DNA of 64,000 bases, taken from NCBI GenBank assembly GCA_977020255.1, contig CDROCS010001116.1:1-64000 (forward strand), given 5' to 3'. The translations under genes and the position numbers were made by a program. The notes beneath the pieces are model-generated. The model was not told where the DNA came from. It saw only the letters and a program-made list of their open reading frames with translations, and made no database searches. Numbering within the stretch: position 1 is the stretch's first letter; each line of letters starts with the position of its first letter. The stretch is from Obrimoposthia wandeli. Lineage: Eukaryota. Shown here one piece after another: positions 3,926 to 27,625 of the stretch.

Positions 3926-3929
3926 TTTC

Positions 3930-5200
3930 CTCCTGGTACTTCATTCTGAGCATACCAATTCTCGCTGGTTTTTTCTCGCTACCACTAGTCATCATGTTTA
4001 TGTAGTTCCGATCACTTACCATTCGTGTAAGTTTAATGGTATTGGTATTTGGCTTCGATTTCTGTGATCTTAACTCATATCGTGACGCATTGTCTTTATT
4101 TGGTACCAATTTGCATCGATTTGCATGTACAATCATCGGTTCCTTGTTCCGATTCTCTTCGTTGATTACTTTCAAATTTGTTGAGGTTGTCTGGATCACC
4201 TTGTATGGTCCTTTGTATGGTCTATGAAGTTTAAACGATAGACCTGGTTCGATGACTGGATAAAATATCATCACTTGATCTCCGACTCTAAATTCATGTG
4301 GTTTTGCTTTTTTGTCGTATTGTTCCTTGTAACCTTCTTGATTGAATTTCAACTTCAATCCGGCTTTGGTCCAAGCATCTTGTAACCTTTCCTTCATGAC
4401 GACAATGTATTGTTCAGTTTCTAGGTACTGAGATGTTGGCTCGGTCCACTCCAGATCCATTGGCATATTGTTCTGTCTGAGATACATCAGATAGAATGGT
4501 GTGTGACCTGTCGCCTCTCGAACTGAATTCCTGTAAGCATATAAACATGAAGGTAAATATTTATCCCAATCCTCTTGCTTATCTGAGCAATAGGATTGTA
4601 CCATCATACATAAAGTTTTATTAAACCTTTCCACCAGACCATCTGTCTGTGGGTGGTATGGTGAAGTTTGTAACTTCATGATTCCGAATATCTTCGATAC
4701 TGCTTTTATGACTTCTCCAGTGAAGTTCTTACCTTGATCCGTTAACAACTTTCTAGGTACTCCGTATCGAAATATTATCTCTTCCACTAAGATTTGCGCT
4801 ATTGTTTCAGCTTTCTGGTTCTGCATGGGGTATGCTTCTACCCATCTCGTCATGTAGTCCGTAAATACTATGACATACTTGTTTCCTTTACTTGATTCTC
4901 TCAATGGTCCCAAGCTATCCATCGCTGTGAATTCCATTGGTGCCAAGGGAACTGGCATTGGTTTCAACGGAACTTTAGTACGAGTTCCGGTGTCTTTTCT
5001 GGTTAAACATACTTTACATTGTTTACACCATTGTTTTATGTCGTCTTCCATACCATCCCAATGGTACTTCTCTTTGATTCTGGCTATTGTCTTTCGCCCT
5101 GACAGATGTCCTCCTAGTGTTCCGTCGTGATACTGATCATCACTGCTGTTTTCAATGACTTCGGAATTACTACTACTATCTTTCCGACATTATTGACAAT
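3930..5200 (-). CDS. pol: Integrase (HHCC, DDE core, GPY/F module)
   Basis: CKQC, AMDSLGPL, LTDQGKNF, YHPQTDGLVERFN, YKGPYKV. Confidence 0.96.
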
Positions 5201-5217
5201 ATACAAGATTCCTTCTT

Positions 5218-7044
5218 TTATCGAGTATTTTTCGCCATCTCATCGTTTAGATCTCCTTTCACCAACAAGTCTTTGATTAGACTCAGCTCTTCATCTTCTT
5301 TCTGTTCTTTGATGATCTCTTTGTCTATTTTACCCGTCTTTAGCAAAATCGTCAGTAGATTTGCTTCTCCTTTTTGGTCATTGGTTTCATCTTCTTCTGG
5401 AATTATGTTTCCTTTCTCGTCTACATTTGTCAATCTCGATAAACAATCTGCGTTGCCATTCGACTTTCCGGTTCTATAACGGATTTCTAGATCGAATTCG
5501 GCCAATTTTAGAAACCATCTGTTTAATCTACTCATCTCATCTCTATGTTTATATAAGAACTGTAGTGGTTTGTGATCTGTATACAGGAATACTTTTTGTC
5601 CTAGCAAATAGTGTCTGTATTGTCTACATGAATACACTATGGCTAGACATTCCTTTTCGATAACAGAGTATCCTCTTTCAGCTCTGTTTAATCCTCTACT
5701 CGCATACGCGATGACGTGTTCTCTTCCTTCGTCATCCTCTTGTCCCAATACTGCTCCTACAGCATAGTTACTTGCATCTGTCATAAGTATGAATTGTCGG
5801 TTTATATCTGGAAACGCTAATATTGGTGCTTTTATCAGTCTTTCTTTTAAATGCTCGAACGCTTGTTGGGCTTCTTTTCCCCATATGAACTTTTCATCTT
5901 TCCTTGTCAACTTTCTCAATGGTGTTGCTATATCTGAAAAATGTTCAACAAATCGTCTATAATAATTCGCAAGACCTAAAAAACTCTGTATTTTCTTAAC
6001 AGTCTTTGGCGCTAAATGCGCTTTGACTTTCTCGATCTTCGCTGGATCAGGTCGAATGCTTTCTTTCGATACTATATGTCCTAAAAATGTTACTCCTCTT
6101 TAGCCCATTCGCATTTTGTAGGTTTAACTTTTAATTTAGCGTTTTCCAGTCTTTTAAATACAACTTCAAGATTTTTTAAATGTTCTTCGAACGTTTTAGA
6201 AAATATTATTATGTCATCGATATAAACCATCGTGTTTGCACACGATGCGAGTACAAAATTCATGCAACGCTGAAATGTTGCTGGAGCTCCTGTCAGTCCG
6301 AATGGCATCTTTTCGCATTCGTACAATCCATCTCCGCAGGAAAAGGATGTTTTGTGTTTATCCTCTTCCTCTATCTCGATTTGCCAGTATCCACTCTGCA
6401 AATCTAATGTCGTAAAATAATCTGAATTACCCAATTTATCGAGCATCTCTTCGATTCTAGGTAATGGATACACATCTTTTCTTGTGATCTTGTTCAGTTC
6501 TCTGAAATCTATACAGAATCTCATTTTCCCATCCTTCTTTTTTTTGCACCAACACCACTGGTGCTGAGAATGGCGAAAAACTTGGTCTAATTACTCCTGT
6601 TTTAGACATATCTTCGATCTGACTTTTTACTTCATCTTGTAATTGTAATGGTACTCGATATGGTCTTCTTCTGACTACTTTGTCTTCTGTCAGTGGTATT
6701 GTATGTTTTATGACAGGTGTTTCTCCTATGTCATATGGATTTTTTGCAATTACTTTCGGAAATTTATGTATTAGATCAAGTAATTGTTTCTTTTCTCTAG
6801 TTGTCAGTCTTTCTGATTGAATTACTATTTCTTCGTAATCATTCGTATCTTTATCGAGTTTCATAGCACACGGTGGGATTCTCCATCTGTGTATCTTTCC
6901 CAACCTCATTCCTCTGTATAATAGAATGTCATTGTTGGTTGTATTCATCAGTCTAACTGGTATTTTATGGTTTTCGATCAGGCATACTGTACTCACAACT
7001 GGTAATTCGTATTTCTCTATGAAATCTCGTGATGGTTCGAACAC
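5218..7044 (-). CDS. pol: Reverse transcriptase and RNase H (frameshifted)
   Basis: RFCIDFRELN, YPLPRIEE, LDLQSGYWQ, MPFGL, YIDD; RNase H TDASNYAVGAVL, EKECLA, TDHKPL. Confidence 0.97.
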
Positions 7045-7099
7045 AACTGGTCCTTTATCTTCTGATAATGTGTGACCTTGAATAAGAAATTGCGATCTT

Positions 7100-7560
7100 T
7101 TACCGATTTTTAGGATTCTCTATGATTACATCAATTTGGTTTATTTGTCTGTTTGATGTGCTATCCTTCAATCTTGGATCTTGTAAATCAATACTTATCC
7201 CTTGCTGTTGTGATAGTACATCCATTCCTAAAATTGTAGGTTCAGGACATTCTTTCATGATTCTAACTGGTATAGTGATCGTATTACGTCCAATTATAAA
7301 TGTACATGGTAATATTCTCGTCACTTTTACAGGGTCTCCATTGACCGATACCAAGAATTCATCTGGTTCTGCCATTGTTCGTTTCTGTTCCTCTGTCAAA
7401 CAGTCTTCACTTACTATCGAAGCTACAGCACCTGTATCAATTAAAGCTTTTACTCTTAAATTATTTACTCTAATGATAGCTGCTGGTCGCTGTGCTCCAT
7501 TTATGTTTCCCATGTGGTATATTGTATTTATCGAATTATTACACTCTGTCAGTCCACCTT
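7100..7560 (-). CDS. pol: Aspartic protease domain 2
   Basis: KALIDTGAVASIV...ILGMDVL. Confidence 0.92.
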
Positions 7561-7985
7561 CCTATGTTTGGATAGTGAAATCTAATGCTCACTTGTCGAT
7601 CTATTATTCTTCGACAAATTGGACATGATACCATTTCATTCGCACATCTCCGACATGTTCTTACATGTCCGCATGGTAGAAAGGCAACTTCTATTTTGTT
7701 GACCATGCAAACTGCGCATTCCGGATCTTCTAGTACGTATTCTAATTCATTTATGTACTCTTTCTCTTGTTTCAATTGTACTGTCATCTTTATCTCGCAG
7801 TATTCAAAAATCGATCCGTATCCGTTTCGCGTAGTTTTTATTTTTAATTCTACCAATTCTCTGATTCTTTCTGCTTCTTTTGGATATAACCTTCTTACGA
7901 ATGACACTACCGGTGTGTCTTGTTGAGCTAAAATCTCTTTCCGTGTGATTTGGTATTCGATTATACATTCGGTTTTCTGTTCTTT
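7539..7985 (-). CDS. IAP UBA-like linker plus C3HC4 RING
   Basis: DTPVV...RIRELVELKIKTTRNGYGSIFE resembles the cIAP UBA. CAVCMVNKIEVAFLPCGHVRTCRRCANEMVSCPICR is an IAP-type RING. Confidence 0.9.
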   Translation of the reverse strand, partial: KEQKTECIIEYQITRKEILAQQDTPVVSFVRRLYPKEAERIRELVELKIKTTRNGYGSIFEYCEIKMTVQLKQEKEYINELEYVLEDPECAVCMVNKIEVAFLPCGHVRTCRRCANEMVSCPICRRIIDRQVSIRFHYPNIGRWTDRV

Positions 7986-7989
7986 TTGC

Positions 7990-8200
7990 TTTATTTTGTT
8001 TTTAAAAATACAAAATTCTGCAAAATTCATGATGTAAAATTTTCTTAGGTAGCTCAAGAGTATATCTGTCGATAATTCGTTCTTTTACACTTGTGGCATT
8101 TAATTACGTCTTTACCATCCTTATAGCAAAAAGTCCCTTTTTTGCCAATTTTTAAGTCTTGGATCTTCGAAAGTTACTTCTCGATATTGTTCGTCACATT
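7990..8200 (-). pseudogene. Degenerate or frameshifted BIR domain 2
   Basis: Across frames: REVTF...KLAKKG.FCYKDGKDVIKCHKC...HHEFC. The His-Cys spacing is not canonical. Confidence 0.55.
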
Positions 8201-8329
8201 CGTTCACTTCTCGCATAACTTCGTATATATCTTCAATTCGACTATTCATTATTACTCTTCCTGTTTTTAGAGCTGCTTCTCTTTTTAGGATCCGTCACTG
8301 TAATCGAAATCGGTGCTTTTCCCGGTTGG

Positions 8330-8586
8330 ATTTCTGGTACGTTTGACGTTTTCAGTTTCAAAAGAAATGGACAATTTGGTGCATCTCTTTTATGACGTCT
8401 CATTGGGTTTTCATTCTGTTCCCATTCTCTAAACTTTACTCTACACCATACGCATCGTACTACTATCTCCTGACCATAACTGCTTGTCGCATTTAGCATT
8501 TCTAAACCTGATCTTGCCATTTTACGTGCCATTCCTTTTGAATAGTACTGTTCTAATATATTTCGTCTCTTTCTCTCGAATCTCAT
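8330..8586 (-). CDS. BIR domain 1 of an element-borne IAP
   Basis: Exact CX2CX16HX6C signature (CVWC...H...NCPF, 8371-8454), preceded by MARSG. Confidence 0.92.
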
Positions 8587-8799
8587 GGGATCCTTTTCTG
8601 ACAGATTTACATATGTTATTTTTCTCCTCGTCGTATCTTGTGGTCCGAAATTTACATTTTTGTAGTGAAGTATCGACTTTGCTAGCGCTTCACTGTTTTT
8701 TGTCTGGGTACGAACTTCCCATACAGAACATATTGTATTTTTCCTTTTCGACTACAGGTCATCTCAACATTTTTATCTCTCTCACTGAACTGTCATTCT

Positions 8800-9130
8800 T
8801 ATAATTTTTGTTGTTTGGTAGTATAATTATTCCTTCAAACATTCGTATTACGTCCATCCCAATCATGACTGGACTACCGCAATCTGTGAATATTCTAGCA
8901 TTTAACTGTAATGCTCTTCCATCGATATTCAATGAACATTTCAGTGTTCCTTCCGACACTACATCTGTACCATTCACGTTAACAAATGTCTGTTTTCTAG
9001 GACATACTTCTCTTAATTCTTTTGATGACAAGATTTCTTTACTCAGTACTGATACTGCAGATCCGGTATCAACTTCGGCAAGATATTCTCTTCCGTTCAA
9101 TGTTACTGCTACTTGTGGTGGAGCATTTGG
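8800..9130 (-). CDS. Aspartic protease domain 1 (retropepsin)
   Basis: LAEVDTGSAVSVL...VMIGMDVI. Confidence 0.88.
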
Positions 9131-9236: not shown

Positions 9237-11340
9237 TTAAGATGCCTCTCTTGAACTTTTCCTTCTCTCCTCCTTTCGTTCCTTCATTGCATATCGCCTT
9301 AACGCCACTTCCTCTTTGTCTGGTAACGGAATCTTTGGTTTTCCTGGTATCTTTGCATATACTCCTGGACTATCATTATCGTCGTCGTTATCGTCTCGAT
9401 AGTTTCTTGGTTCTCTCATCATGGTTCTCGTTTGGTGTTGTTCCTTCTTGAGGGCTCGCAACTCGTTCTCGTGATGATGATGGTGCATTAGATATTTTGC
9501 TAAAAATGGAAAACATCCAATTATAAGTTGCCAGGTGATTCCGGTTATCCTGTATAAACTATACGTAGACAACACCTGGGCTATAATTACCTGCACAAAT
9601 TTAATTATAACATAAATACCTATGATACCCGAAAATAATTGTCCTAAAACAAGGAATTTCCCCCACATCTTTCTAAGTGTCTGATGTGCTGCTTCCTTGA
9701 AATGACTTGGCGATAATAACATATCGAAATTCGCATATCTCGCTCCTGGCGGTAATGCTCGATGTACCATCTCCGTAAGTACTCTGGCTCTTCTTACTGG
9801 AAACATTATTTCGTTCCACGCCGCTTTTAAATCTTTTTCATTGTACAATCCTGCGTTCTCCATATTTTCCACCGCTTGGAATTTCATTTTACCTTTAAGA
9901 TTAGTCATTCTTATCATCGCTGGGGTTTTCGTTGGCTTTCGATCAGGTAACGTTATCCATAGATTATTCGTCATCTGATATTCAGGTGCCATTATATTAG
10001 AGCAGCTGATTTCTTTAGTTGGAGTGTCTTTTGGAAGCAACATTCTCGTGATTGGTTCAACAAAAAGATCTTTTAAATTATACGTTACTGCCAATTCGCT
10101 CGTACATCGATCTGTTTTTCTCAACTGTACCTCTACTTTATTACACTTGTAAGTATACTATACTTCTCCCATGGTTTTAGCAAATACTCCTTCATCCAAG
10201 GGTAATAATGGTGCTACCATGTCTGGATTCGTAATAGCTAATGCTAACTTTGTTCTTACGATCTCTTTGTTTAGCTGGCAATCTCTTTCTATCATCATCC
10301 GATATAACTGTTCCATTTGCATCAATCCTTTATGATAATAGAAATCAATTTTATTATTAAAATACGTGTGTAGCTGCATATCTTTTGGTTTTAGCTTGGT
10401 TTCTGCCAATGCTATTGCTTCTTTAGACAAAACTATTCCTGGATAGTTTGTAGTACTAACAGTCATTCCGCATCGCGCTTTGTTTCTCTTTTTAATAAAT
10501 ATCAATCCTTCTTCTATTGATGTTGCCATTAACAGTGTAGGTGTCTTTGTCATTGGAATTGGTCTTGTTTCATTGAGCAATCCTTTTCCTACTTTATTAT
10601 ACAGGAATCCTTTCTCCATCTTTATTATACAGGAATCCTTTTATTTTATTAAAGCTAATCTCTTTCAAAAATACTAAAGAGCATTGCTTCGGATTTATGT
10701 TATACATAATTTTGGCTTCCCCTGTAAAACAGGATGCATCTGTCATTTTACATTCTGGATACTTCATCATTAGTTGTGTCTTTTTATCAAAATTGGCGGT
10801 CCATGTTTTTAATTCGATCTTGTAAGTTACATCCATTACTAACTCAGATACTTTGGTTCCACGCACGTTTTTGTTTCTCCGTCACAAGATCCATCGGCCC
10901 ATCGTTGTCCGACTCTCGTGACTGTTTCGTATCGTCTCACTCCAATTTTACTTCAGGTTTGTAATTTTGTCTACCTCTATTGTTCCCGTTCGAAATGCAT
11001 CTTCGCAATCTCTCGGCAAACCTTATGTGCCTTGTACGGTGTGGTAGGTGTGATTTCTGACATAAAAACTTCTATGACCACAATAGAATTCGTGATAACT
11101 TGAATGGATTGAACATTCTTTCACTTCTACTTGTACTTTATCAACATCCTGATACACAAAGTAGTTTTCAACACCTTGAACTTCTAGTTTTGACGGTTGT
11201 GATTCTGGACAGTCTTCGCTGTCAAGCAGTGAATACTTTTGTCCCATCTTTGGTATGCTACAGTCATATGCTATCAATCCTGATGCCTGTTGCATTCCCA
11301 TAAACATTACTAACATCATCATCATCATTGTTGTGGACAT
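9237..11340 (-). CDS. env: Envelope: chuvirus (Jingchuvirales)-type glycoprotein, ~700 aa, in 4-5 frameshifted pieces
   Basis: Signal peptide then LIAYDC, FYCG, TNYPGI, TYFNNK, DCQL, GEV..YKC, AGLY..D, IMFP and a C-terminal TM region. The order and spacing match chuviral G motifs as I recall them. Confidence 0.85.
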
Positions 11341-12178: not shown

Positions 12179-12742
12179 CTACAATTTCGAGACTTCGTCT
12201 TCTCCTACTAGTTGGGTTACGGTTTCGTTTTGTCTCACTTGGTTAGCTGTATCCGTGACTTCATCTTGTCTGATTGGAATTATATCTGCTGGTGGCACCT
12301 CGACCACTGGAGTTGTCAACTCATTTTCTAAATTCATGTCTTGTAATTCAGTTACGTACGGTTCTGGTGTGGATGTCTTGTTCCAAGCTTCAGCTACATC
12401 ATTATCTCCGCTTTCGCTTGAACTGTCTAAAATTTCTATAGGCGTTTTTATCATTTCTAACGCAGAATTCAATATCTCGGTTAATCCTTCATTATCTACT
12501 AACTCTTGACGTCCTACAGTGATGACATCAATTTTTTCCTCTAATTCATTTCCTATCGGATATCCAAACTCGACTGGTACGTCCTCATCATCTAGTGATC
12601 TCCCTTTATAATGGAACAACATATTCATTCCATCAATTTCAAGTTTCTCAGCCAACTTTTTCCGAATCGTTTTCATTGTTTGATACACGTTAAGTTTTTC
12701 ATGTATTATCTGTCCGGAAATTAATCGAAGTGAAATTTTCAT
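12179..12742 (-). CDS. Ubiquitin/SUMO-like domain protein with acidic tail; ATG overlaps the gag stop (ATGA)
   Basis: MKISLRLISGQIIHEKLNVYQTMKTIRKKLAEK...LFHYKGRSLDDEDVP...KIDVI aligns by eye with ubiquitin and SUMO beta-grasp patterns. Confidence 0.7.
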   Translation of the reverse strand: MKISLRLISGQIIHEKLNVYQTMKTIRKKLAEKLEIDGMNMLFHYKGRSLDDEDVPVEFGYPIGNELEEKIDVITVGRQELVDNEGLTEILNSALEMIKTPIEILDSSSESGDNDVAEAWNKTSTPEPYVTELQDMNLENELTTPVVEVPPADIIPIRQDEVTDTANQVRQNETVTQLVGEDEVSKL

Positions 12743-14991
12743 CGTTCCTTTTGGTTTGATCTCTGTACATAACGACCATAACCTTTCAGTAGTCCTCGGG
12801 GTACTTCTTTGTAACCCAAGTTATCATGACTATGTTTAACCAATTCTGCACGCACTTCTTCCAATCGGTGCACTTTAATTGTTTGCAATTTGGCCAGAAC
12901 TTCTGGAGCTTCACTCGTTTCATCTAACGGTTGATTTAACGTCTCCTTAGCTTCACTAATTATCTTTTTTACATTTTCCATACTCGTAGCATTTCTCGCT
13001 GCTTCCACATGATCAGTCATAGGTTGTGCGTTACACGTTTTCTCTATTGGTGTCTCATACGCTTCTAATATTCTATTCATTAAATCATTCATCTCTTCTC
13101 TCGAATGTAGACTTTTCTCTTGTTTCGACAACGTAGATGAATTCGCCATCTTTGTATGTGGTGAATCTTTAATTATTCCCAACATTCGTTCAAATTTACT
13201 ATCACTATCTTCAAAATCTATTTCGCGTCGAAGCTCGGTCTCGCGATTCCTATCACTGTCATCGCTTACATAACTAAAATTTCCTTTCGGTTTCGGCGAA
13301 CTCTCACGACTATTTGTCTTGTCAACATTATTATTATTATATCTACCGGAATTATTATATCTCTCAGCTCCTTGCTGTCCTACGTAATTATTGTATCTCT
13401 CAGCTCTATGCTGTCTGTATGCATAGTTATTATATCTACCTGGTGACTGTTGTCTATCTGTATACTGATTATTCAGTCTCCATGGTTGGGGAGTATATCC
13501 ACCACCTCTATTCCATGGCGGAGGTGAATTATATCCTCTATAATTATTTCCAAAATTATTATTACCGAAATTATTATTTCCAAATCTGTTAGTTCCGAAC
13601 TCTTTACTTCTCGTACAATCTCTCGAATAATGACCCATTTGTTTACACGTGTAACACATTATTCTCCCTCGAATATCTATCTTATTTTGTTCATCTTCGA
13701 ACTGTACTCGACGACTATTCTGTCTATTATCATAGCGTCCTCTAAAATCATTTCTTCGGAAATTCGATTCAAAACCGCTTCCTCGATTATTGAATCTTCC
13801 GTCACTATTTCCTGCATTATTTCCAAATCGAGAGTCACTTCGCTCTCCTCTGTTGGCGTTATAATTCCTATCGTCTCCTCTCAAGGTTGGCGATTTCGAA
13901 TTATCTCTATTAAATCTATTCCTGGAATCATCTCTATTTCTATTCCACGAATCATTATTATTTCTACCTCTTGAATCATCTCGATTCCTGTTCCAAGACT
14001 CACTATTATTTCTACCTCTCGAATCATCTCGATTCCTACTTCGGAAATTATCTCTATTTCCGTTACTGGATTCATCTACTTTTTCGAACTTATTTTGTCC
14101 ATAACTTCGATTCTGAAAATTACTCGGTTCTGTTTTATTCACGAAGACCTTTGTCTTATCGTCGTCACCTGCAGTCATTGCGTAGATTGCCAATGCTGCG
14201 TTATTCTTTATATTTTTCTCAATCTCTCTCGCCTTTCGCACGGCGTTATCAAAATCATTTGTATCCGATACTGCTAATAACACTTTAATATCCTTTTTCA
14301 ATCCTCCTCTAAATATATCTAACAAAACCTCTGCCATTTCATTTTGGTTCCGGTCATTTTCCGCTGCTTGTGCTTCTTGAGGTACAGGAATACCGTCCTG
14401 ATTTCTCATTATTCTTCTTGGGTACGCTCTTGCGGCCAAGGTTCTCAAAACATACGCGTATTCATTCACGCCTTCATCATGTTTCTGTTTCCGTTCTCTC
14501 ATGAGTCGCTTATTTACTTTGGCTAAGTCTCCTAATACCAATTTTCCAATAAAAGCATTTTCCAACGTTGGCCAATCTAAACGTTCTGCTTCTGTCAAAT
14601 GTTTATACACTTCAAGTGCTAATCCGGTTAAATGTGCCTGTACTCTAACACATTTTTCTTTATCGTTCCATCCTTGAACATCTGCACAACTCGAATATTC
14701 TGCGAGGAAGTCACAAATACTTTCCTCATCTCCTTTAAACTTTGTAATCTGCAATGATCCTGAAAAGTTGGGTCTCAACGTCGCATTTAAAGCTTGTGCC
14801 AACTGCTCGGCATTCATTTCACCTACATTATTTCCTGCATTAATATCTGCTTGAGCTCCTGGTTGAGCCATATTTTCAACTATAACTTCTTCAACTATTT
14901 CTTCAATATTATTCAATGGAACTTCCTCAATCACTACTGGATTGGCAATTTCAAATTCTTCTTGGTCTATGTCACCAAATAATTCAGTCAA
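12739..14991 (-). CDS. gag: Gag polyprotein (capsid region, N/R/G-rich repeats, single CCHC zinc knuckle)
   Basis: Retrotransposon capsid-like KFKGDEE...GWNDKEK...HLTGLA. Zinc knuckle CYTCKQMGHYSRDC. The frame is open upstream to ~15243 and the first in-frame ATG is at 14871. Confidence 0.93.
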   Translation of the reverse strand: MTELFGDIDQEEFEIANPVVIEEVPLNNIEEIVEEVIVENMAQPGAQADINAGNNVGEMNAEQLAQALNATLRPNFSGSLQITKFKGDEESICDFLAEYSSCADVQGWNDKEKCVRVQAHLTGLALEVYKHLTEAERLDWPTLENAFIGKLVLGDLAKVNKRLMRERKQKHDEGVNEYAYVLRTLAARAYPRRIMRNQDGIPVPQEAQAAENDRNQNEMAEVLLDIFRGGLKKDIKVLLAVSDTNDFDNAVRKAREIEKNIKNNAALAIYAMTAGDDDKTKVFVNKTEPSNFQNRSYGQNKFEKVDESSNGNRDNFRSRNRDDSRGRNNSESWNRNRDDSRGRNNNDSWNRNRDDSRNRFNRDNSKSPTLRGDDRNYNANRGERSDSRFGNNAGNSDGRFNNRGSGFESNFRRNDFRGRYDNRQNSRRVQFEDEQNKIDIRGRIMCYTCKQMGHYSRDCTRSKEFGTNRFGNNNFGNNNFGNNYRGYNSPPPWNRGGGYTPQPWRLNNQYTDRQQSPGRYNNYAYRQHRAERYNNYVGQQGAERYNNSGRYNNNNVDKTNSRESSPKPKGNFSYVSDDSDRNRETELRREIDFEDSDSKFERMLGIIKDSPHTKMANSSTLSKQEKSLHSREEMNDLMNRILEAYETPIEKTCNAQPMTDHVEAARNATSMENVKKIISEAKETLNQPLDETSEAPEVLAKLQTIKVHRLEEVRAELVKHSHDNLGYKEVPRGLLKGYGRYVQRSNQKER

Positions 14992-15483
14992 ATTAAAACT
15001 GCCGGTTGAAACCGCTGATTGATCAACGCCTCTTTCTGATACGTTTTCTTCGACTCTAGTCTTTTCTGTTACTTTGTTATCTGTTTGGGGAACCTGTTCA
15101 ATTCGGTTAACTTTATTATTATTTATCTCTTCCTTGGGAATCTGACTTTGTCTTCTAGTATTATACGCGGGTCCTTTTCTATTATCCGTTGTCTTATCAA
15201 TTATGTATTCGTTTACGATATCAATATACTTATTATTTTTATCTTATTTCACAATTCTTATTTTACGATTTTTTATCTCTTTAATTAGTTCGAGGACAGA
15301 GTCTCCCGACTTAACCTATTCAATTAATTACTTCGAGTATCAATCCACTCGATTCTCACTTTATCAATTTATTTACGATTTTATCTTTTTAATTAGTTCG
15401 AGGACAGAGTCTCCCGACTTAACTTATTCAATTAATTACTTCGAGTATCAATCCACTCGATTCTCACTTATAAAATTTACTGA

Positions 15484-16263
15484 CTCGAGGAACAAATCCA
15501 CTCGACTTCTCAAAACTTATCAAATTCTTACTTCGAGGAACGAATCTACCCGATTTCTCAACACTTATCAAATTCTTAACTTCGAGGAACAAATCTACCC
15601 GATTTCTCAACACTTATCAAATTCTTAACTTCGAGGAACAAATCTACCTGATTTCTCAACACTTATCAAATTCTTAACTTCGAGGAACAAATCTACCCGA
15701 TTTCTCAACACTTATCAAATTCTTAACTTCGAGGAACAAATCTACTCGATTTCTCAACACTTATCAAATTCTTAACTTCGAGGAACAAATCTACCCGATT
15801 TCTCAACACTTATCAAATTCTTAACTTCGAGGAACAAATCTACCCGATTTCTCAACACTTATCAAATTCTTAACTTCGAGGAACAAATCTACCCGATTTC
15901 TCAACACTTATCAAATTCTTAACTTCGAGGAACAAATCTACCCGATTTCTCAACACTTATCAAATTCTTAACTTCGAGGAACAAATCTACTCGATTTCTC
16001 AACACTTATCAAATTCTTAACTTCGAGGAACAAATCTACCCGATTTCTCAACACTTATCAAATTCTTAACTTCGAGGAACAAATCTACCCGATTTCTCAA
16101 CACTTATCAAATTCTTAACTTCGAGGAACAAATCTACCCGATTTCTCAACACTTATCAAATTCTTAACTTCGAGGAACAAATCTACCCGATTTCTCAACA
16201 CTTATCAAATTCTTAACTTCGAGGAACAAATCTACTCGATTTCTCAACACTTATCAAATTCTT
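15484..16263. repeat. 49-bp tandem array (16 copies) in the 5' leader
   Basis: Unit TTCGAGGAACAAATCTACCCGATTTCTCAACACTTATCAAATTCTTAAC, starting at 15532, 15581, 15630 ... 16218. It is preceded by two related 108-bp units at 15289 and 15397. Confidence 0.97.
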
Positions 16264-16289
16264 ATCTCAATTTACTTATATCTTCTTCT

Positions 16290-16560
16290 GAAACTTATTC
16301 TCAATTGTCTATATTCTTCTGCTGAAACTTATTCTCAATATTTCTGAAACTTATTCTCAATATATGAAACTTATTCTTAATATCTGAAACTTATTCTTAA
16401 TATCTGAAACTTATTCTCAATATCTGAAACTTATTCTTAATATCTGTACTTATTCTATTTACCTGAAACTTATTCTCAATTATCTGCAACTTATCTGAAC
16501 TTATTCTATTCACCTGAAACTTATTCTCAATTTTCCAAAACTTATCTGAACTTATTCTAC
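16290..16560. repeat. ~20-bp degenerate tandem repeat just downstream of the PBS
   Basis: (TATCTGAAACTTATTCTYAA)n. Confidence 0.85.
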
Positions 16561-16585
16561 GTGAATTCGCTGTGTCCGACGAGCT

Positions 16586-16604
16586 ATCCTCACTCGGGGC
16601 ACCA
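16586..16604 (-). promoter_or_regulatory. Primer-binding site complementary to the 3' end of elongator tRNA-Met
   Basis: Sense TGGTGCCCCGAGTGAGGAT. The plus strand ATCCTCACTCGGGGCACCA matches the animal elongator tRNA-Met 3' end including CCA. It sits 8 nt from the LTR end. Confidence 0.9.
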
Positions 16605-17097
16605 CTTTAATATGTTGGGGTTTCTATACGAAACTTGGTATAGAGCCTCTTGACTGTGCGGAGGTCCCCAACGTGAGTTCGATTAGAAGCAGGTCTTAAA
16701 GTTGGTCGTGGCCTACTTAGTGTTATGGTTGCCTAATCTCTTGTACTATCTGAAGGTATTTGATTTGATGTCTCTTAGTCTGAAGGGTGTAAAAACAACT
16801 TGTTCTAATGTAGGAAATTGTTTATTCAAAATTCACGTAACTAACACCACAATACGTTTATGTACGTATTTCTAAAAAGTATGATAAAATTCCTAAAGGA
16901 CTTCTGTGAGTCTCTACAAGAAGTGGGGATGAACCACGTATCGATTTTACGTTCAGGTGATTAAGTTTCTTAGTTTTAGTCTTCTTACTCAGGTTGGTTA
17001 ATCTATAACGCAACTCTCTTAAATTTCTTCGCTCCTACTTCTTATCTCTAGCTACAATTTCTTGGTTCCTTACTCTCTCTGTGTGTGTTTGACCCGA

Positions 17098-17526
17098 ATT
17101 GTCTATTGTAGACAAGGGATCTCCTAAAAACCTAATTGTCAAGATGACAATGAAAACTTACTCCTAATTGTCAACTATGGACAATGAACGAACCGAATTG
17201 TCAGCTAGTGGACAATGAGTCTTACCGAATTGTCTACTAGGGACAATGAATATTTATCCGAATTTCCAACTAGGGGAAATGAATGAACCTAATTGTCAGC
17301 TAGGGACAATGAATCTTACGGGAAAAACGTCTGGTAGGTTTCCTAATTGTCGCTGGGGACAATGAATAAATGTCCGATCCTAATTACCAACTAGGGGCAA
17401 TGATTGTGTTAACGAGACAGTGATCCTAATTGCCAGCTAGGGGCAATGAATTTGTGTATTATTAAGAAAATGTAGAATTACCAACTAGGGGTAATGAATA
17501 TATCCTAATTGCCTACTAGGGGCAAT
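17098..17526 (-). repeat. Array of 12 short hairpins with covarying stems inside the LTR
   Basis: Units are ATTGTC-N5-8-GACAAT, with variants ATTTCC/GGAAAT, ATTGCC/GGCAAT and ATTACC/GGTAAT. Most loops contain CTAG. Spacers vary in length. Confidence 0.9.
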
Positions 17527-17649
17527 GAATGAACCTAGTCGGTGGTCTTACCAGTTACTCGAGATTCCTAAACGCGGTGGGATGTCCGATGCTGTTTCCG
17601 ATATCGTCTTCTCGCTCAGCCTTAGTCTTTTGGATACTGTCGGATCGAG

Positions 17650-18070
17650 TCTTTTGGGATACTCAGATATACTTTGGATATTCAGATATACTTTGGATAT
17701 TCAGATACACTTTGGATATTCAGATACACTTTGGATATTCAGATACACTTTGGATATTCAGATACACTTTGGATATTCAGATACACTTTGGATATTCAGA
17801 TACACTTTGGATATTCAGATACACTTTGGATATTCAGATACACTTTGGATATTCTTTCAAATATACTTTGGTTACTGTCTTTCAAATATAATTTGGTTAC
17901 TGTCTTTCAAATATACTTTGGTTACTGTCTTTCAAATATACTTTGGATACTGTCTTTCGAATATACTTTGGTTACTGTCTTTCAAATATACTTTGGTTAC
18001 TGTCTTTCGAATATACTTTGGTTACTGTCTTTCAAATATACTTTGGTTACTGTCTTTCAAATATACTTTT
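17650..18070. repeat. 19-bp tandem repeat grading into a 25-bp tandem repeat within the LTR
   Basis: (TTTGGATATTCAGATACAC)n followed by (TTCAAATATACTTTGGTTACTGTCT)n. Confidence 0.95.
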
Positions 18071-18152
18071 CTTTTCGGCTATACTTTTCCGCTCAACCTG
18101 CAGTCAGGGAGTTGATTCTGAATTTGTGTTTTCTGTCTTCAAAACCTCTGCC

Positions 18153-18158
18153 TTTATA
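18153..18158 (-). promoter_or_regulatory. Candidate LTR TATA box (sense TATAAAGG); predicted start site near 18122
   Basis: TATAAA ~450 nt inside the LTR 5' end, with an Inr-like TTCAGAAT ~30 nt downstream. A sense AATAAA at 16821-16826 would give a long R region. Confidence 0.45.
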
Positions 18159-18689
18159 CGAAACTTCCTGTCAGTCAACGACAGCTGAAATGAAATTAAA
18201 AGTTATTCGACTGCACAAAATGTGCTTACCTTTTCCTTGATTGACGGTTTGATTGCTGGAGAATATTCTTCCTGTCAGTCAACGGCAGCTGAAAAAACTC
18301 AAATTGATTTTACTGCACGAAATGTGCTTACCTTTTTTTTCTTGATTGACGGTTTTAATTAACCGTTTTTCTTTTAATTAATTCTTATTTTTTGTCGTCC
18401 TTGTTAATTAACTTTAAACTTTTATATATTTTCGCATAATACACGACCTTCGTGGTCCTCCTAATTTTACCCTAAATTTCACTAATTTTACTTTTAAAAC
18501 TTAATTTAATATTTTAATTTAATTTTCGACCTTGCTTTCAAGGATTTTTATTTTAGTATTTAATCGACTAAAATATTTAATTTTCTTAATTCTCAACCTT
18601 AACACCTTTATTGAAAGACAAAGTTATAATTTTTAAACGCAAATCTTTGGTTTGTATACCTAGCCAGTTAAGAAAATATCTGTCCTCAG

Positions 18690-23196: not shown

Positions 23197-24954
23197 CTTA
23201 TAAGCCTTTATTTTTAGTAAATTAAAATATATTTATAAATTTGTTTGAGTGTACAGGTTGTCTAGACAAAGCTAGCCTTTTTTGGAAATATTAATAGAAT
23301 CTATGTCGAAATAACTATTAACAAAATCACAAACTTTACTTTTTCAGAAAACATCTAACATTAAAATTAGAGCTTTACAACTTTAAACATTACAAATTAA
23401 AAAAATACAACAAATCAAAAAATAATATTACAAATTTTTAAACTTACTTATAGTGAGAGCTTTTTATACGAGCTAATAAAAAAAGCTGTAATTATACTTT
23501 TTACTTTAAAATGTTTTTATTAGCTTTTTGTTTTCATATTAAATAATATTTTTAAAAATCTTAATGTTTAACCCGAGAAACGTGCAATTTTGAAAATAAA
23601 TCTGAAATGAAAATAAACTTTATTTACGTAAAAATAAACTTACATCTAATAGATACCTGGACTAAACGAAAAATATTCCGTTTTTAAGTTTTGATAAAAC
23701 AAATGAATTTCTGGACAAAAAACCTTAGAATGAATATCATTCAAATTACCAAAATGGTCATGTGATTATTTATATCAATTACTAATTTAAAACAATTTTT
23801 TAAAATAATTATATAATCTTTATTATAATTTGTATATAACAATTAAATTATAAAGATTTAAGTATCTTGTTTATAATTTATAAACGTATTTTTTATAACA
23901 GTGTAATAGTAATAATAATTTAAAAGAATTAATGAACACATAAACATAGTTTTTTATCAATAATATTGGAAAAATTAATATATTTTTTAATTATTTTTCA
24001 GTAATTGCCTGGATTTCGATTCATGTTAATGTCAAGTGACTGGGTATAGAGTTTTTAACCGAAGTTGACCAAAGTTATAAGAAAATTTGTATACTGATTT
24101 TCACTATTACAAAATAAAATACCCATGTTATATTAGGAAAAGTAAAATATAATTAGAAAATATGTTTTTTTATAATAAGAATTTAATTTTAAATAGTAAA
24201 GGTTCAAATAAAAAATATGTTAGAAAAAAATTTAAAATATGTGTTAAATAAATTGAAACCTTGAAAAGGTCATAAAATGTGTATATAATGATCAGAACAA
24301 TGTTCAAAAAGACAGGAAAAATTAGAAAATAGAAGTGAAAACGAGACACAAAAGTGCAATCTAATATTAGAAATTCTTGCGCGATCGGAATCTTTTAATT
24401 CAATTTTTCAAAGAGATTAATAAGTAGGTAACCTTTATTTAACTCTATCACATTAATGACACACATTATTATGTAGTACACTTTAATATAGATAAAATAT
24501 ATAATTTGTCAAAATCACTTAATATCCCATTTCTTTTTAAATCCATAAACCCATCGAAGTTTTCATCCTCTGTATCTTAGTTTAACAATTGGGAGATTTC
24601 GGCAACAGGTATGCCTGGATCCTTGTCGTTATAATACGAGTCAGAATCGTTGCTTTTACCTGGCTATTCAGTATTGATTCCGGCCTTCACAAAACATATT
24701 GTCGATTTTGAAGGAAATTAAAGTATTTTGAGTGCGTCTTATTGTCTGGAAAATACGGTGCATTGTTTATACAGATACAGTATGTCTAATTTGACTGTTC
24801 AATCATCATAAGCTCGTTGACAGCTTCTGACTGGCTCCTATAATTCAATAAATTGAAAGACAGACAGAAATACATACAAATATCTGCCTCACAATGTTCA
24901 GTAACCTAGGCAAATAACTAGCTACCCTTTAATAGCTTTTGACAAACATTTACA

Positions 24955-25985
24955 AGGGCTGAGTTTCTAATTGAAACTCTTTGATTAGATCCTCGTATGG
25001 AGGGCCACAACGTGAGTTCTGTAGCGATAGGACTTACAGATAGATGTGGCCTACCTGTTCTTTTCTTACTTCATTCTAGTCTCAAATCTGAAGGTTTTTT
25101 GTGTCTTATTGTCTTGTAGTAAGTTCAAAGAGTTATGTTCACAGAATAGTTAGTGGGACCCCAAAACTAGTGTTGTGTGATGTAGCGTAGGTGGATCGTT
25201 TATCCGCTGAGTTAGCTTTTTACGTCGGAAGGGTCTGGCAACACCAAGACCGAATATCAATTAAACAGAGCCAGGGCCAATCTACGTAGACAATACTCCT
25301 CTGAATCTGTCAGAACGTGGAATATTGTTCCGTGTGTTGTCTCTTGGCTAAACTATATCTTAGGGGGCACACGAATTTCACAAGGGAATTAACTCGTTAT
25401 GAATCTTCGATCGATTTCGCTAGAATAACTATATTTAAATTATCACACTTAGAACTTCCTAAAATTACTCCAGAAATACACAATAGGGTTGATACTTTTC
25501 TATGCGTATATTTTATACGCCCCCTGCTTTAATCACCTTTCAAATTATTCCCCGTACCTTACTACCCGTTTATCGAACTCTTTACTATACTATACTATCG
25601 GTTACAATTTCAAATGATGTTTTCTAAATCAATAACGCTTTAAAATTTAAACTATGTTTATTAAATCCGTAACACTTAAATTCCAGTGATGTTTTCAAAT
25701 CAGTGACGTTTTTCAATTCAATTATGTTTACTTAACAAAGCGTTTTAAATTCAAAACGTAATTTTACTCAATAGCTTTTCAATTCAAAATGTGACTTTAT
25801 TCAATAGCTTTTTAATTTAAAATGTGATTTTATTCAATAGCTTTTTAATTCAAAATGTGACTTTATTCAATGGCTTTTCAATTCAAACTGTGACTTTATG
25901 CAATAGCTTTTCAATTCAAATGTAATTTTATGCAATAGCTTTTCAATTCAAATGTGACTTTATTCAATAGCTTTTTAATTCAAAT
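24955..25985 (-). repeat. Truncated LTR related to 58478-59935
   Basis: Collinear similarity over ~600 bp with the solo LTR, followed by ~33-bp tandem repeats. Confidence 0.8.
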
Positions 25986-27625
25986 TCTGAGAATCTGTAT
26001 ATTGTAATTTACGAGAATTTTAATGAATAAGCGTTTGAAAAAAATATGAAAGTCTAATGTTACTTTTAGGTAATGAGCTTTCTGAAATAAAAATGTACAA
26101 GACATATTACCATCTAAACTTCTTTCAAATATGAAATTTTACAAAAAAAGAAATATAACAATAAATTTACGAAATTGTCACTAGATTGCAAATTGCTGGT
26201 ACAACTTATAATATTTGTATTTCATTCCATGTATAACGACTATTCCTCAAACAGCAAAATTGCTTCTTCTCAAAGTATCCAAATGTTGAATAACTTCAAT
26301 AGTTTTGACAAAATTTATTAATTAAATTGAAATTTTCTTCGATTTGAGGATTTTAACTTATTTAAATTTAGTATTTTATATTATAAGTAGTTAAGACATT
26401 ACAAATAACTTTATTTTAATTGTTTGTAAAAAATAGTTTGTGAATCTGTAAATTTTAAAGTTAGACGTTTACTGAAAAACTAAAGTTAGTGTTTTTGTCA
26501 ATAGTTATTAATTAGTTCTATTAATATTAATCATATTTATTTCAGTTCGTAATGAAGCCTTATTGATGTTATACTGCAACTTATCTAATGAATTATCCAA
26601 ACTTTACAAATAAAGAAATTGAAACGATAGTTACATACTCCATTGCATATGATTAAGAGAGCTCAATTACTAAGAAGAAACTGATAAGGAAACTCCTGCA
26701 AATACTACACAAGTTTGTAAGAAACGTTTTAAGAAAACTATCTGTTTTACCAAAATTAAAATCGCATTATAATCGACTGAATTAAATTCCAGACCAAGTA
26801 AAGGCAAATATTGTCACAGCTTTGAGAGATGACAGTTGTAAATCCAAACATAATCTTTTCGTCAGTTCAATGTTTCTTTGCGTTCTGTTAATAATATGAT
26901 TAAAGACCATGGTTTTAAGGCTTATATAATACAGAATGGTGCAGCAATTAAAGAAAGTTGACTTACCTAAACGACTTACATTTTACAAACTAGTTATCAG
27001 TACAAAATAATAATATTCAGTGACGAAACAATGCTACATATTATTGGCATTACTATACAATGGAAAATGAACACAGGCTTCACAGAGAAACTTCTAAATT
27101 CCAATTTCATAATCATTCTGGCATTGATTCTCTCACGATTATTTTAAACTATGAATTGAGATCGTTAAGTGGACACTATTCGAGATATTGCTATTCCTTC
27201 TCTCTAATATTTGATATATTCAACCTGTTTACCAACAAAAGCTTCCGTGAATTCGAGGAGTGCTGAATACTGGATTAAAATATCGCTGTATTGGGATGTT
27301 TGATTAAATAAGAATTTTTAATTATTTTTAATTGGGTACTAATGTACCCCAAAACACATTGAAATCATAACTCTCCAATTCTTCAAGACTATCAATCATG
27401 GCGTGCTATTATAAGATTAAAATTTGTATATCCAATAAAGAAGATAAAAATCATTTAGAGATATAGGCAAACGTTGTCAGCAGCTGATTTTGCAAAAATA
27501 GAATATGTGCTTTTTAATCAGACTAATGCCAATTTTCAATTTTAACATTATTTATAATTTATGAGAAATTTGCATTGAAATGTTTTAAGGATAATTCATT
27601 TTTTGACGAGAAATACATTTTGTAG

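What the first reader, a model, noticed from the sequence alone, without database searches (positions are those of the whole stretch)
16660..16760. U5 carries extra segments complementary to the primer tRNA-Met: a multipartite primer-binding system
Besides the PBS, the plus strand has CGTGAGTTCGAT (16672-16683) and ATCTGAAGGT (16748-16757). These match the T-arm and the anticodon-stem/variable region of elongator tRNA-Met (...GTCTCATAATCTGAAGGTCGTGAGTTCGATCCTCAC...), so the sense RNA could pair along much of the tRNA. The same pieces are among the best-conserved motifs in the diverged LTRs. These read cgtgagttc and gtctcaaatctgaaggt at ~25010-25095, tgagttc and gtctcaatctgaaggt at ~58535-58601, and cgtgagttc at ~29822. 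Analogous to the HIV primer activation signal and Ty1/Ty3 extended primer contacts, but more extensive.
Basis: partly seen in the sequence, partly recalled or inferred. Interest (0 to 1): 0.75.

Follow-up and report, generated by a model that had tools for sequence, protein, structure and literature searches.

The report
tRNA-Met-derived primer contacts in U5
Next to its normal primer-binding site, a retrovirus-like element in an animal genome carries two further short, conserved stretches complementary to the same methionine tRNA, probably extra docking sites like those known in HIV-1 and yeast Ty elements, and they look like leftovers of old copies of the primer tRNA.

Summary
The element lies on the minus strand. 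Its order is 5' LTR, primer-binding site (PBS), gag, env-like gene, IAP-like gene, pol.

- **PBS:** 16604->16586 is complementary, 19 of 19, to positions 58-76 (with CCA) of a natural elongator tRNA-Met variant found in 35 environmental tRNA genes.
- **U5 boxes:** 16683->16672 complements tRNA 48-59 (12/12). 16757->16748 complements tRNA 38-47 (10/10). With the PBS they cover tRNA 38-76 without a gap.
- **Chance:** the two-box match is reached by 1 of 5000 shuffles. Other tRNA species and the opposite orientation score lower.
- **Conservation:** the core boxes are 19/19 identical between LTR copies A and B, against 73/136 in the rest of U5.

New here: the boxes belong to about five decayed, same-orientation tRNA-Met-like units on both sides of the PBS. 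This points to an origin in reverse transcriptase over-reading the primer tRNA and duplication of PBS units.

Function as auxiliary primer contacts is inferred, not shown. The contacts would be a PAS-like one at the same tRNA site as in HIV-1, plus an anticodon-stem/variable-loop one. The effective T-arm box is about 9 nt. The three helices cross each other. I rate it a new variant of a known kind, of moderate interest.

The parts
16586..16604 (-). Primer-binding site: 19 nt complementary to elongator tRNA-Met positions 58-76 (CCA included)
   Evidence: Unique in the window. 19/19 to tRNA-Met genes such as L012:26-98:+ plus CCA. One mismatch (tRNA position 66) to the human elongator tRNA-Met printed in PMC8216282.
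16605..16612 (-). 8-nt spacer between the presumed LTR end (...CA) and the PBS
   Evidence: Read. The LTR end is placed by the alignment of the four LTR copies. The exact end is uncertain because no 3' LTR is in the window.
16613..16800 (-). U5 of the 5' LTR (about 190 nt). The border with R is inferred.
   Evidence: AATAAA on the minus strand at 16826-16821, followed by a GT-rich run. The profile of the four U5 copies matches 16781-16614.
16672..16683 (-). T box: complementary to tRNA-Met 48-59 (12/12). Conserved core 16672-16680 = tRNA 48-56. PAS-like.
   Evidence: Core identical in copies A, B and D, 7/9 in C. Predicted mostly unpaired in the free RNA (0.16-0.18).
16748..16757 (-). AC box 1: complementary to tRNA-Met 38-47 (3' anticodon stem plus variable loop), 10/10
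   Evidence: The single best-conserved 10-column window of U5: 10/10 in A, B and C, 8/10 with D.
16758..16769 (-). Decayed T-arm-like continuation of AC box 1. Unit 16748-16769 aligns to tRNA 38-59.
   Evidence: Local alignment score 22, rank 4, reached by 0/300 shuffles.
16770..16786 (-). AC box 2: second anticodon-arm-like piece, 15/17 to tRNA 30-46
   Evidence: score 26, rank 2, reached by 1/300 shuffles.
16617..16660 (-). U5-terminal block including a small hairpin. Homologous to the stretch of copy B that aligns to tRNA 21-63. Strongly decayed in copy A.
   Evidence: Alignments. In B, 24955-24994 versus tRNA 21-63 scores 30, reached by 0/300 shuffles.
16560..16569 (-). T-arm-like box downstream of the PBS: 9/10 to tRNA 48-57. 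The one difference leaves a G-U pair. Collinear with the PBS as in an over-extended primer copy.
   Evidence: RNAduplex pairs element 16605->16570 with tRNA 39-76. On its own it is only marginal (my estimate p about 0.05).
16613..18100 (-). 5' LTR. The U3 outer end is not determined. The 19-bp and 25-bp tandem arrays at 17616-18100 lie inside or at its edge.
   Evidence: No second LTR of this copy is in the window.
15271..16550 (-). Leader between PBS and gag, filled with tandem arrays (49-bp and about 20-bp units)
12739..14991 (-). gag-like ORF (750 aa) with a CCHC zinc knuckle, the likely nucleic-acid chaperone
   Evidence: Pfam zf-CCHC, E = 7.4e-06.
9237..11340 (-). env-like gene (class III fusion-glycoprotein family). 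Broken: at least three pieces in two frames.
   Evidence: Pfam Monjiviricetes_fusion on three pieces, E = 3.8e-12 to 7.5e-43.
8759..9100 (-). First aspartic-protease domain
   Evidence: Pfam gag-asp_proteas and Asp_protease_2.
7539..8586 (-). IAP-like gene (BIR plus RING). The two domains lie in different frames.
   Evidence: Pfam BIR E = 1.6e-10 and zf-C3HC4_3 E = 7.8e-13.
3549..7513 (-). pol (protease, RT, RNase H, integrase), Ty3/gypsy type. Broken: pieces in three frames.
   Evidence: Pfam RVP/gag-asp_proteas, RVT_1, RT_RNaseH and rve. Integrase relatives are named gypsy integrase-like.
24945..25990 (-). LTR copy B. T-box core 25011-25019, anticodon-arm box 25078-25095 (18/19 to tRNA 29-47), tRNA-like unit 24955-24994. 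No recognisable PBS follows.
58478..59100 (-). LTR copy C (82% identical to B). T-box remnant 58535-58541, anticodon-arm box 58585-58601 (17/19 to tRNA 29-47).
29765..29905 (-). LTR U5 copy D, the most diverged. T-box core 29822-29830, decayed anticodon-arm box 29871-29889.

Best explanation
The region is the U5-PBS-leader junction of a Ty3/gypsy-type, envelope-carrying LTR element on the minus strand, with gene order GAG-ENV-POL. Reverse transcription is primed by elongator tRNA-Met, whose last 19 nt pair with the PBS. Two further blocks in U5 lie 68 and 144 nt upstream of the PBS. They are exactly complementary to the 5' half of the T arm (tRNA 48-56, up to 59 in this copy) and to the 3' anticodon stem plus variable loop (tRNA 38-47). 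Proposed mechanism (inferred): the zinc-knuckle Gag/NC chaperone anneals the tRNA 3' end to the PBS, which opens the acceptor and T stems. The freed T-arm strand then pairs with the T box, and the opened anticodon stem and variable loop pair with the AC box. The whole 3' half of the tRNA (38-76) is then held on the template in a three-helix, pseudoknot-like initiation complex that selects and positions the primer. This parallels the HIV-1 PAS and C-rich contacts. Origin (inferred): the boxes are the surviving, selected parts of about five tandem, decayed antisense copies of the tRNA-Met 3' half. These would have arisen when reverse transcriptase over-read the primer tRNA beyond position 58, towards the modified position 37, and when PBS units were duplicated. 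Shown: the complementarity, its specificity, its non-randomness and its conservation. Inferred: pairing in vivo, the role in initiation and the origin.
For: - **PBS:** 19/19 to natural tRNA-Met(CAT) genes.
- **Independent test of the boxes:** the search pattern covered only tRNA 54-73, yet all 35 genes carry the 12-mer and 20 carry the 10-mer.
- **Deep conservation of the tRNA:** positions 21-65 are identical between the environmental variant and the human elongator tRNA-Met.
- **Chance:** 3/5000 and 1/5000 for copy A, 0/5000 for copy B. Local-alignment ranks 1-4 in A are each reached by 0-1 of 300 shuffles.
- **Specificity:** summed top-four scores are 86, 96 and 76 for tRNA-Met in sense. Medians for other tRNAs in both orientations are 52-57, and the best non-Met scores are 68-74.
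- **Conservation, pairwise:** core boxes 19/19 (A-B), 17/19 (A-D) and 17/19 (B-D), against 73/136, 44/136 and 36/136 outside.
- **Conservation, by window:** the AC box is the top 10-column window of U5. Fisher p = 0.005 for three copies.
- **Fit to the PBS:** the blocks abut at tRNA 47/48, and no U5 unit keeps the acceptor complement that would compete with the PBS.
- **Accessibility:** the T box is predicted largely unpaired in the free RNA.
- **Chaperone:** gag has a CCHC knuckle.
- **Same tRNA sites in HIV-1:** PAS pairs with tRNA 48-55 (PMC3675109). [quoted passage not shown]
- **Over-extension is documented:** plus-strand products ending at position 37, and matching sequences beside the PBS, are described in PMC13191261.
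Against: - No experiment bears on pairing or function.
- The host's own tRNA-Met gene was not available. There is no tRNA gene in the window and the host is unidentified. 15 of the 35 environmental genes differ by a compensated pair in the anticodon stem, which would give one mismatch in the AC box.
- Only four LTR copies were compared, about three independent lineages, and aligners anchor on identical words.
- All copies share one tRNA, so covariation cannot be tested here.
- Duplex energies of the boxes are not outstanding against 30-nt windows across the window.
- The free-RNA fold is not better than shuffles (z = -0.88).
- The AC boxes of B, C and D are not predicted to be especially accessible.
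- The three helices cross, so folding tools could not model the full complex.
- Other conserved U5 blocks have no tRNA complementarity.
Confidence: 0.55

Rival explanations
1. Fossils without present function. The tRNA-like pieces are relics of past replication errors: plus-strand synthesis reading into the primer tRNA beyond position 58, and duplication of extended PBS units. They now decay neutrally and play no part in priming.
For: About five same-orientation, internally collinear tRNA-Met-like units lie on both sides of the PBS, most of them badly decayed. Exact coverage ends at position 38, next to the expected modified base 37. Copies B and C have 1-2-nt gaps at positions 36-37. Over-extension products ending at position 37 are documented for HIV-1 (PMC13191261).
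Against: Within the same units some parts are near random while the two core boxes stay 89-100% identical between lineages whose remaining U5 is 26-54% identical. The boxes lie at orthologous places in all four copies, so they are inherited and not re-acquired. The only parts lost everywhere in U5 are those that would compete as a second PBS.
Confidence: 0.3
2. Intramolecular role. The T box is conserved because it pairs with the PBS or leader within the genomic RNA, like a U5-leader stem that masks the PBS. Its likeness to the tRNA T arm would then simply follow from being complementary to the PBS.
For: The 5 nt of the T box that complement the tRNA T stem are necessarily complementary to part of the PBS (read). 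HIV-1 masks its PAS in a U5-leader stem (PMC3675109).
Against: The match extends over the T loop and position 48, which a stem with the PBS does not require. The predicted ensemble shows no T-box-to-PBS pairing: fewer than 1 expected pair, and the T box is paired with probability 0.16. This reading does not explain the AC box.
Confidence: 0.07
3. Chance matches, or a tRNA pseudogene or tRNA-derived SINE inserted on the plus strand.
For: The pieces are tRNA-sense on the plus strand. 9- and 10-mers shared with a tRNA occur elsewhere in the window at chance level. The T-arm 12-mer also occurs in at least one non-Met tRNA.
Against: Shuffle tests. ARAGORN finds no tRNA in the window. Rfam finds no tRNA-like match in 16300-17100 even at E up to 10. 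The blocks are in reverse order relative to a tRNA on the plus strand. They are part of an LTR present in four copies.
Confidence: 0.03
4. Targets of host tRNA-derived small RNAs. The complementarity matters because tRNA-Met fragments silence the element, not because the element uses it.
For: Any tRNA-complementary stretch in a transcript could be bound by tRNA fragments (my general knowledge; not tested here).
Against: An element would be selected to lose such sites, not to keep them for as long as the LTR divergence implies. The sites match internal tRNA parts, not the usual 3' fragments.
Confidence: 0.05

Closest known systems
HIV-1 primer activation signal (PAS) pairing with the anti-PAS of tRNA-Lys3 (Beerens and Berkhout; NMR evidence in PMC3675109)
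   Same: A short motif in U5, tens of nt upstream of the PBS, complementary to the 5' strand of the T arm. The tRNA site is the same (48-55 in HIV-1, 48-56/59 here) and becomes free only after the PBS helix opens the tRNA. A zinc-knuckle chaperone is encoded.
   Different: 9-12 nt here against 8 nt. A different primer (elongator tRNA-Met) and a different element (invertebrate-type Ty3/gypsy). Not predicted to be masked in a U5-leader stem. No functional data.
HIV-1 C-rich region and A-rich loop contacts with the anticodon arm of tRNA-Lys3 (summarised in PMC11251516)
   Same: [quoted passage not shown] Copies B and C also complement the anticodon loop and the 5' stem.
   Different: The order along the RNA differs. 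Here the anticodon contact lies upstream of the T-arm contact, whereas in HIV-1 the PAS is the most upstream. Here the block is a 10-nt exact match that abuts the T-box target in the tRNA.
Ty1 extended PBS (boxes 0, 1, 2.1; Friant et al. 1996, cited in PMC5371799; PMC3592414) and Ty3 bipartite PBS (PMC5371799)
   Same: LTR retrotransposons in which the primer tRNA pairs with template segments beyond the PBS, the T arm included. A T-arm-like box also lies downstream of the PBS here (16560-16569).
   Different: Ty1 and Ty3 use initiator tRNA-Met with short PBSs (10 and 8 nt). Their extra boxes lie downstream of the PBS (Ty1) or in U3 at the other end of the RNA (Ty3). Here the PBS is full length and the main boxes are in U5.
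Primer over-extension sequence next to the PBS of lentiviruses and spumaviruses (PMC13191261)
   Same: Template letters that match the tRNA beyond position 58, explained by plus-strand synthesis reading past m1A58. The stretch 16585-16544 is collinear with tRNA 57-38.
   Different: Here the collinear copy is interrupted and decayed, and further units sit inside U5. This is not described for the over-extension sequence.
GAG-ENV-POL envelope-carrying Ty3/gypsy elements of Nematoda, Bryozoa and Platyhelminthes (PMC13524379)
   Same: Gene order gag, class III-type fusion glycoprotein gene, pol. LTR plus tRNA PBS.
   Different: That study scored only 12-nt PBS matches and does not describe U5 contacts. 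This copy also carries an IAP-like gene and a second protease domain. The host was not identified.

Membership tests
LTR retrotransposon, Ty3/gypsy (Metaviridae), GAG-ENV-POL type | Two LTRs flanking the internal region | tested here: inconclusive
   Only the 5' LTR is in the window. No repeat of 16500-19500 occurs in 1-3000. Three further related LTR ends confirm it is an LTR family.
LTR retrotransposon, Ty3/gypsy (Metaviridae), GAG-ENV-POL type | tRNA primer-binding site just inside the 5' LTR | tested here: met
   19/19 to tRNA-Met 58-76, 8 nt from the LTR end.
LTR retrotransposon, Ty3/gypsy (Metaviridae), GAG-ENV-POL type | gag with CCHC knuckle; pol in the order PR-RT-RNase H-IN with gypsy-type RNase H | tested here: met
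   Pfam hits. Integrase relatives are named gypsy integrase-like.
LTR retrotransposon, Ty3/gypsy (Metaviridae), GAG-ENV-POL type | Fusion-glycoprotein gene between gag and pol | tested here: met
   Monjiviricetes_fusion hits between gag and the protease. The order is as described in PMC13524379. The gene is broken.
PAS-type auxiliary primer contact | Motif in U5 upstream of the PBS, complementary to the 5' T-arm strand of the same tRNA that fits the PBS | tested here: met
   16683->16672 pairs with tRNA 48-59, 68 nt upstream of the PBS.
PAS-type auxiliary primer contact | Conserved among related elements | tested here: met
   The core is identical in A, B and D and 7/9 in C. It is far above flanking U5. 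Only four copies, all from one genome.
PAS-type auxiliary primer contact | Masked by base pairing in the free genomic RNA (U5-leader stem) | tested here: not met
   Predicted paired probability 0.16, with no predicted T-box-to-PBS or leader helix. This is a prediction only.
PAS-type auxiliary primer contact | Co-variation of the motif with the PBS when the primer tRNA differs | not tested
   All copies in the window fit the same tRNA.
PAS-type auxiliary primer contact | Stimulates initiation of reverse transcription | not testable with these tools
   This is an experimental property.
Ty1-type extended PBS | Short PBS followed downstream by boxes complementary to the T and D arms of initiator tRNA-Met | tested here: not met
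   The PBS is 19 nt and the tRNA is the elongator type (G1-C72 end, T54). One downstream T-like box (9/10) exists. No D-arm complement was found.
Ty3-type bipartite PBS | 8-nt 5' PBS completed by segments in U3 at the 3' end of the RNA | tested here: not met
   The PBS is full length and the extra boxes are in U5. The 3' end of the element is outside the window.
tRNA gene, pseudogene or tRNA-derived SINE | Collinear cloverleaf-forming tRNA-like sequence | tested here: not met
   ARAGORN finds none. Rfam finds none at E up to 10. The blocks are in reverse order on the plus strand.

The most novel reading that the evidence does not exclude
U5 of this LTR family was built from the primer itself. 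Repeated over-extension of plus-strand synthesis into tRNA-Met (to about position 37) and duplication of the extended PBS unit would have laid down a tandem series of antisense tRNA 3' halves. Units upstream of the working PBS became U5. Selection then kept one good copy of each tRNA segment as an auxiliary contact and erased every competing acceptor complement. If so, PAS-like contacts in retroelements in general could be fossil PBS units.
Probability: 0.3. Interest if true: 0.7.

Novelty: new variant of a known kind. Interest (0 to 1): 0.55.

Why it matters
Whether extra tRNA-template contacts such as the HIV-1 PAS are general and real has long been argued mainly from lentiviruses. Here a very distant, invertebrate-type Ty3/gypsy lineage with a different primer keeps an exact 9-12-nt complement to the same tRNA site (48-56). 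[quoted passage not shown] That is comparative support for such contacts being an old and recurrent solution in retroelements. The surrounding decayed tRNA-like units also suggest how these contacts arise, from over-extended copies of the primer. That idea can be tested with sequence data alone across LTR families that use different tRNAs.

Tried and rejected
- **BLAST between copies:** BLAST of the A LTR against the window found no B, C or D similarity, because they are too diverged. MAFFT and a profile search were needed.
- **Free-RNA fold:** the MFE fold of the free U5-PBS RNA is not better than shuffles (z = -0.88).
- **Duplex energies:** RNAduplex energies do not single out the boxes against 30-nt windows across the window. 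RNAduplex suboptimals give long loop-rich duplexes of little use.
- **Modelling the full complex:** the three helices cross, so a co-fold of all three cannot be computed with the tools at hand.
- **Literature for an invertebrate tRNA-Met:** the searches returned only mammalian papers. Two HIV PAS papers by PMC id are not held. The supplement of PMC13524379 with PBS types is not held.
- **Host identification:** the best integrase relatives are only 54-59% identical, and the ORFs in the rest of the window are degraded elements. The host stayed unidentified.
- **Human tRNA in scripts:** the 72-nt human tRNA of PMC8216282 has no reference, so it was compared by eye only and not passed to any tool. 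L012:26-98:+ was used in its place.
- **Copy D:** its tRNA signal does not stand out from other tRNAs.
- **Sense 7-mer:** the 7-mer shared in sense with the tRNA D loop (16711-16717) is at chance level.

Full report
**What is there.** The window has no N and no tRNA gene. From base 1 to about 16,000 the plus strand is T-rich, and all long ORFs are on the minus strand. Pfam scans give this order on the minus strand:
- a 750-aa gag-like ORF with a CCHC knuckle
- a fusion-glycoprotein gene (Monjiviricetes_fusion)
- an aspartic protease domain
- an IAP-like gene (BIR plus RING)
- a second protease, then RT, RNase H and integrase

Integrase relatives are gypsy-type, and the closest are only 54-59% identical. 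GAG-ENV-POL Ty3/gypsy elements with this kind of envelope gene are described for nematodes, bryozoans and flatworms (PMC13524379). The host was not identified.

**State of the genes.** Counts only:
- gag reads as one ORF.
- The env-like gene is in at least three pieces in two frames, so it has at least one frame change and at least one in-frame stop.
- The pol domains lie in pieces in three frames, with at least four frame changes.
- BIR and RING lie in different frames.

This copy is therefore degraded. Its 3' LTR is outside the window.

**The observation.** The element's RNA is the complement of the plus strand, so plus-strand letters that equal the tRNA are antisense to it in the RNA. Read 5' to 3' on the element RNA:
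- AATAAA at about 16826-16821
- a second anticodon-arm-like piece, 16786->16770
- AC box, 16757->16748
- T box, 16683->16672
- presumed LTR end at 16613, then an 8-nt spacer
- PBS, 16604->16586

**The tRNA.** At the outset I recalled a tRNA-Met sequence from memory in my reasoning. I used none of it and replaced it with tool results.
- A full-text search with the window's 12-mer found the human elongator tRNA-Met printed in PMC8216282. By eye, the boxes equal its positions 48-59 and 38-47. The PBS equals positions 58-76 with one mismatch, at position 66.
- I then scanned metagenome contigs with the paper's tRNA letters 54-73, carrying the window's base at position 66. This pattern cannot match the element itself.
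- The scan gave 45 loci. ARAGORN called a tRNA-Met(CAT) gene at the match in 35 of them, many inside eukaryote-style tRNA clusters.
- All 35 genes carry the 12-mer, half of which lay outside the pattern. 20 carry the 10-mer, which lay wholly outside it.
- The commonest gene (eight loci, for example L012:26-98:+) differs from the human one at three positions. Two of these, 7 and 66, form a compensated pair.
- So a natural elongator tRNA-Met fits the PBS 19/19 and both boxes exactly. Positions 21-65 are identical from human to these environmental eukaryotes, so the host's tRNA is very likely the same there.
- 15 genes have a compensated change in the anticodon stem that would give one mismatch in the AC box. 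Which form the host has is unknown.

**More than chance, and specific.**

| Copy | Longest exact match reached in shuffles | Top-two sum reached in shuffles | Summed top-four local score, tRNA-Met sense |
|---|---|---|---|
| A | 12 nt, 3/5000 | 1/5000 | 86 |
| B | 11 nt, 8/5000 | 0/5000 | 96 |
| C | 11 nt, 15/5000 | 12/5000 | 76 |
| D | 9 nt, 191/5000 | not informative (single match) | 62 |

- Other tRNAs in both orientations have median summed scores of 52-57. The best non-Met tRNA reaches 68-74 on A, B and C.
- On D the signal does not stand out: a non-Met tRNA scores 70 against 62.
- Gapped local alignments of tRNA-Met to copy A give four hits, each reached by 0-1 of 300 shuffles.
- ARAGORN and Rfam see no tRNA-like gene here, and the blocks are in reverse order for a tRNA on the plus strand. 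This is not a pseudogene or a SINE.

**Conservation.** A profile of the four U5 copies finds exactly four places in the window, all on the minus strand.
- B and C are 82% identical over about 635 bp. A and D are much more distant.
- The AC box is the single best-conserved 10-column window of U5: 10/10 in A, B and C, and 8/10 with D.
- The T-box core (tRNA 48-56) is 7/9 invariant in all four copies.
- The last three letters of the 12-mer (tRNA 57-59) are not conserved. They would overlap nucleotides already paired to the PBS and the expected m1A58. The effective T box is therefore about 9 nt.
- Copies B and C extend the anticodon match to tRNA 29-47, with 1-2-nt gaps at positions 36-37.

| Pair of copies | Identity in core boxes | Identity in the rest of U5 |
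|---|---|---|
| A-B | 19/19 | 73/136 |
| A-D | 17/19 | 44/136 |
| B-D | 17/19 | 36/136 |

The flanks of the boxes continue the tRNA in register, in decayed form.
- 16748-16769 aligns to tRNA 38-59.
- 16770-16786 aligns to tRNA 30-46, 15/17.
- In copy B, the last 40 nt of U5 (24955-24994) align to tRNA 21-63. The score of 30 was reached by 0/300 shuffles.
- Just downstream of the PBS in A, 16560-16569 matches tRNA 48-57 at 9/10, and the difference leaves a G-U pair. This piece is collinear with the PBS.

The junction is thus a series of about five same-orientation, antisense tRNA-Met 3'-half units. The exact blocks cover tRNA 38-76 without a gap and stop next to position 37.

PMC13191261 reports, for HIV-1, minor plus-strand products that read past m1A58 and stop at positions 55, 54 or 37. 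It also reports a matching 'primer over-extension sequence' beside the PBS of lentiviruses and spumaviruses. I infer that the units arose by such over-extension and by duplication of PBS units. Units upstream of the working PBS would then have been carried into U5.

**How it most likely works.** This is inferred. Once the tRNA 3' end is on the PBS, the T-arm 5' strand and the opened anticodon stem and variable loop are free to pair with the two boxes.
- Ty1 and Ty3 also use extended or bipartite sites (PMC5371799 and PMC3592414).
- The T box is predicted mostly unpaired in the free RNA (0.16), while the PBS is paired with the leader (0.76). Unlike the HIV model, no masking stem is predicted.

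Energetics and MFE folds gave no extra support. The three helices cross, so no tool here could fold the complex.

**Rivals.** Pure relics remain the main rival, at about 0.3. The decayed units favour it. The strong contrast between the boxes and their flanks argues against it. An intramolecular stem, chance or a pseudogene, and tRNA-fragment targeting are less likely, as set out under Rival explanations.

- I did not fetch relatives of this retrovirus-like element from public collections. The PBS/box covariation test was therefore not done.
- I strung no segments of the region together and built no consensus.
- Besides the memory slip above, while counting breaks I went through the ORF pieces with their coordinates in my reasoning. 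None of that is in the notes or in this report.
- None of the fetched contigs was taken for human.

**Verdict.** It is a new variant of a known kind, extended primer-template contacts, with a plausible and testable origin story. Interest 0.55.

Noticed in passing
window 7539-8586 (-); also 45978-46943 (+): An IAP-like gene (BIR plus RING) sits inside the element between the env-like gene and pol. A second, diverged BIR + RING + integrase set lies on the plus strand at about 45978-52655, so the gene seems to belong to the element family and is not a chance neighbour.
   Followed up: partly
window 8759-9100 and 7100-7513 (-): Two separate aspartic-protease domains in one element, one before and one after the IAP-like gene. 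This may mean a chimeric or rearranged copy.
   Followed up: no
window 9237-11340 (-): The envelope-like gene is of the Monjiviricetes fusion-glycoprotein family and lies between gag and pol. This is the GAG-ENV-POL order reported for nematodes, bryozoans and flatworms. It is broken in this copy.
   Followed up: partly
window 36629-36734 (-): A U6 spliceosomal RNA gene (Rfam RF00026, 85.9 bits). It is the only clear host gene seen in the window.
   Followed up: no
window 15271-16550 and 17616-18100: Long tandem arrays flank the finding. 49-bp and about 20-bp units fill the leader between PBS and gag, and 19-bp and 25-bp units lie on the U3 side. LTR copies B and C also carry tandem arrays in U3. 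The roughly 20-bp leader unit contains a 7-mer equal to tRNA-Met 38-44.
   Followed up: no
window 16709-16719 (also 25041-25051 and 58569-58579, approximate): A 9-10-nt U5 block between the two boxes is as well conserved as they are in copies A, B and C, but has no complementarity to tRNA-Met. Its function is unknown.
   Followed up: partly
window 24900-24945: LTR copy B is followed by letters that align with the leader of copy A, but no PBS can be recognised between them.
   Followed up: no
window 52590-52672 and 52690-52772: An exact 83-bp direct repeat 100 bp apart, next to an integrase-like stretch of another degraded element.
   Followed up: no
L003, L025, L040 (metagenome loci): In several environmental contigs the elongator-type tRNA-Met gene lies 4 bp from a second tRNA-Met gene with the anticodon at position 33. 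This is a tight Met-Met pair.
   Followed up: no
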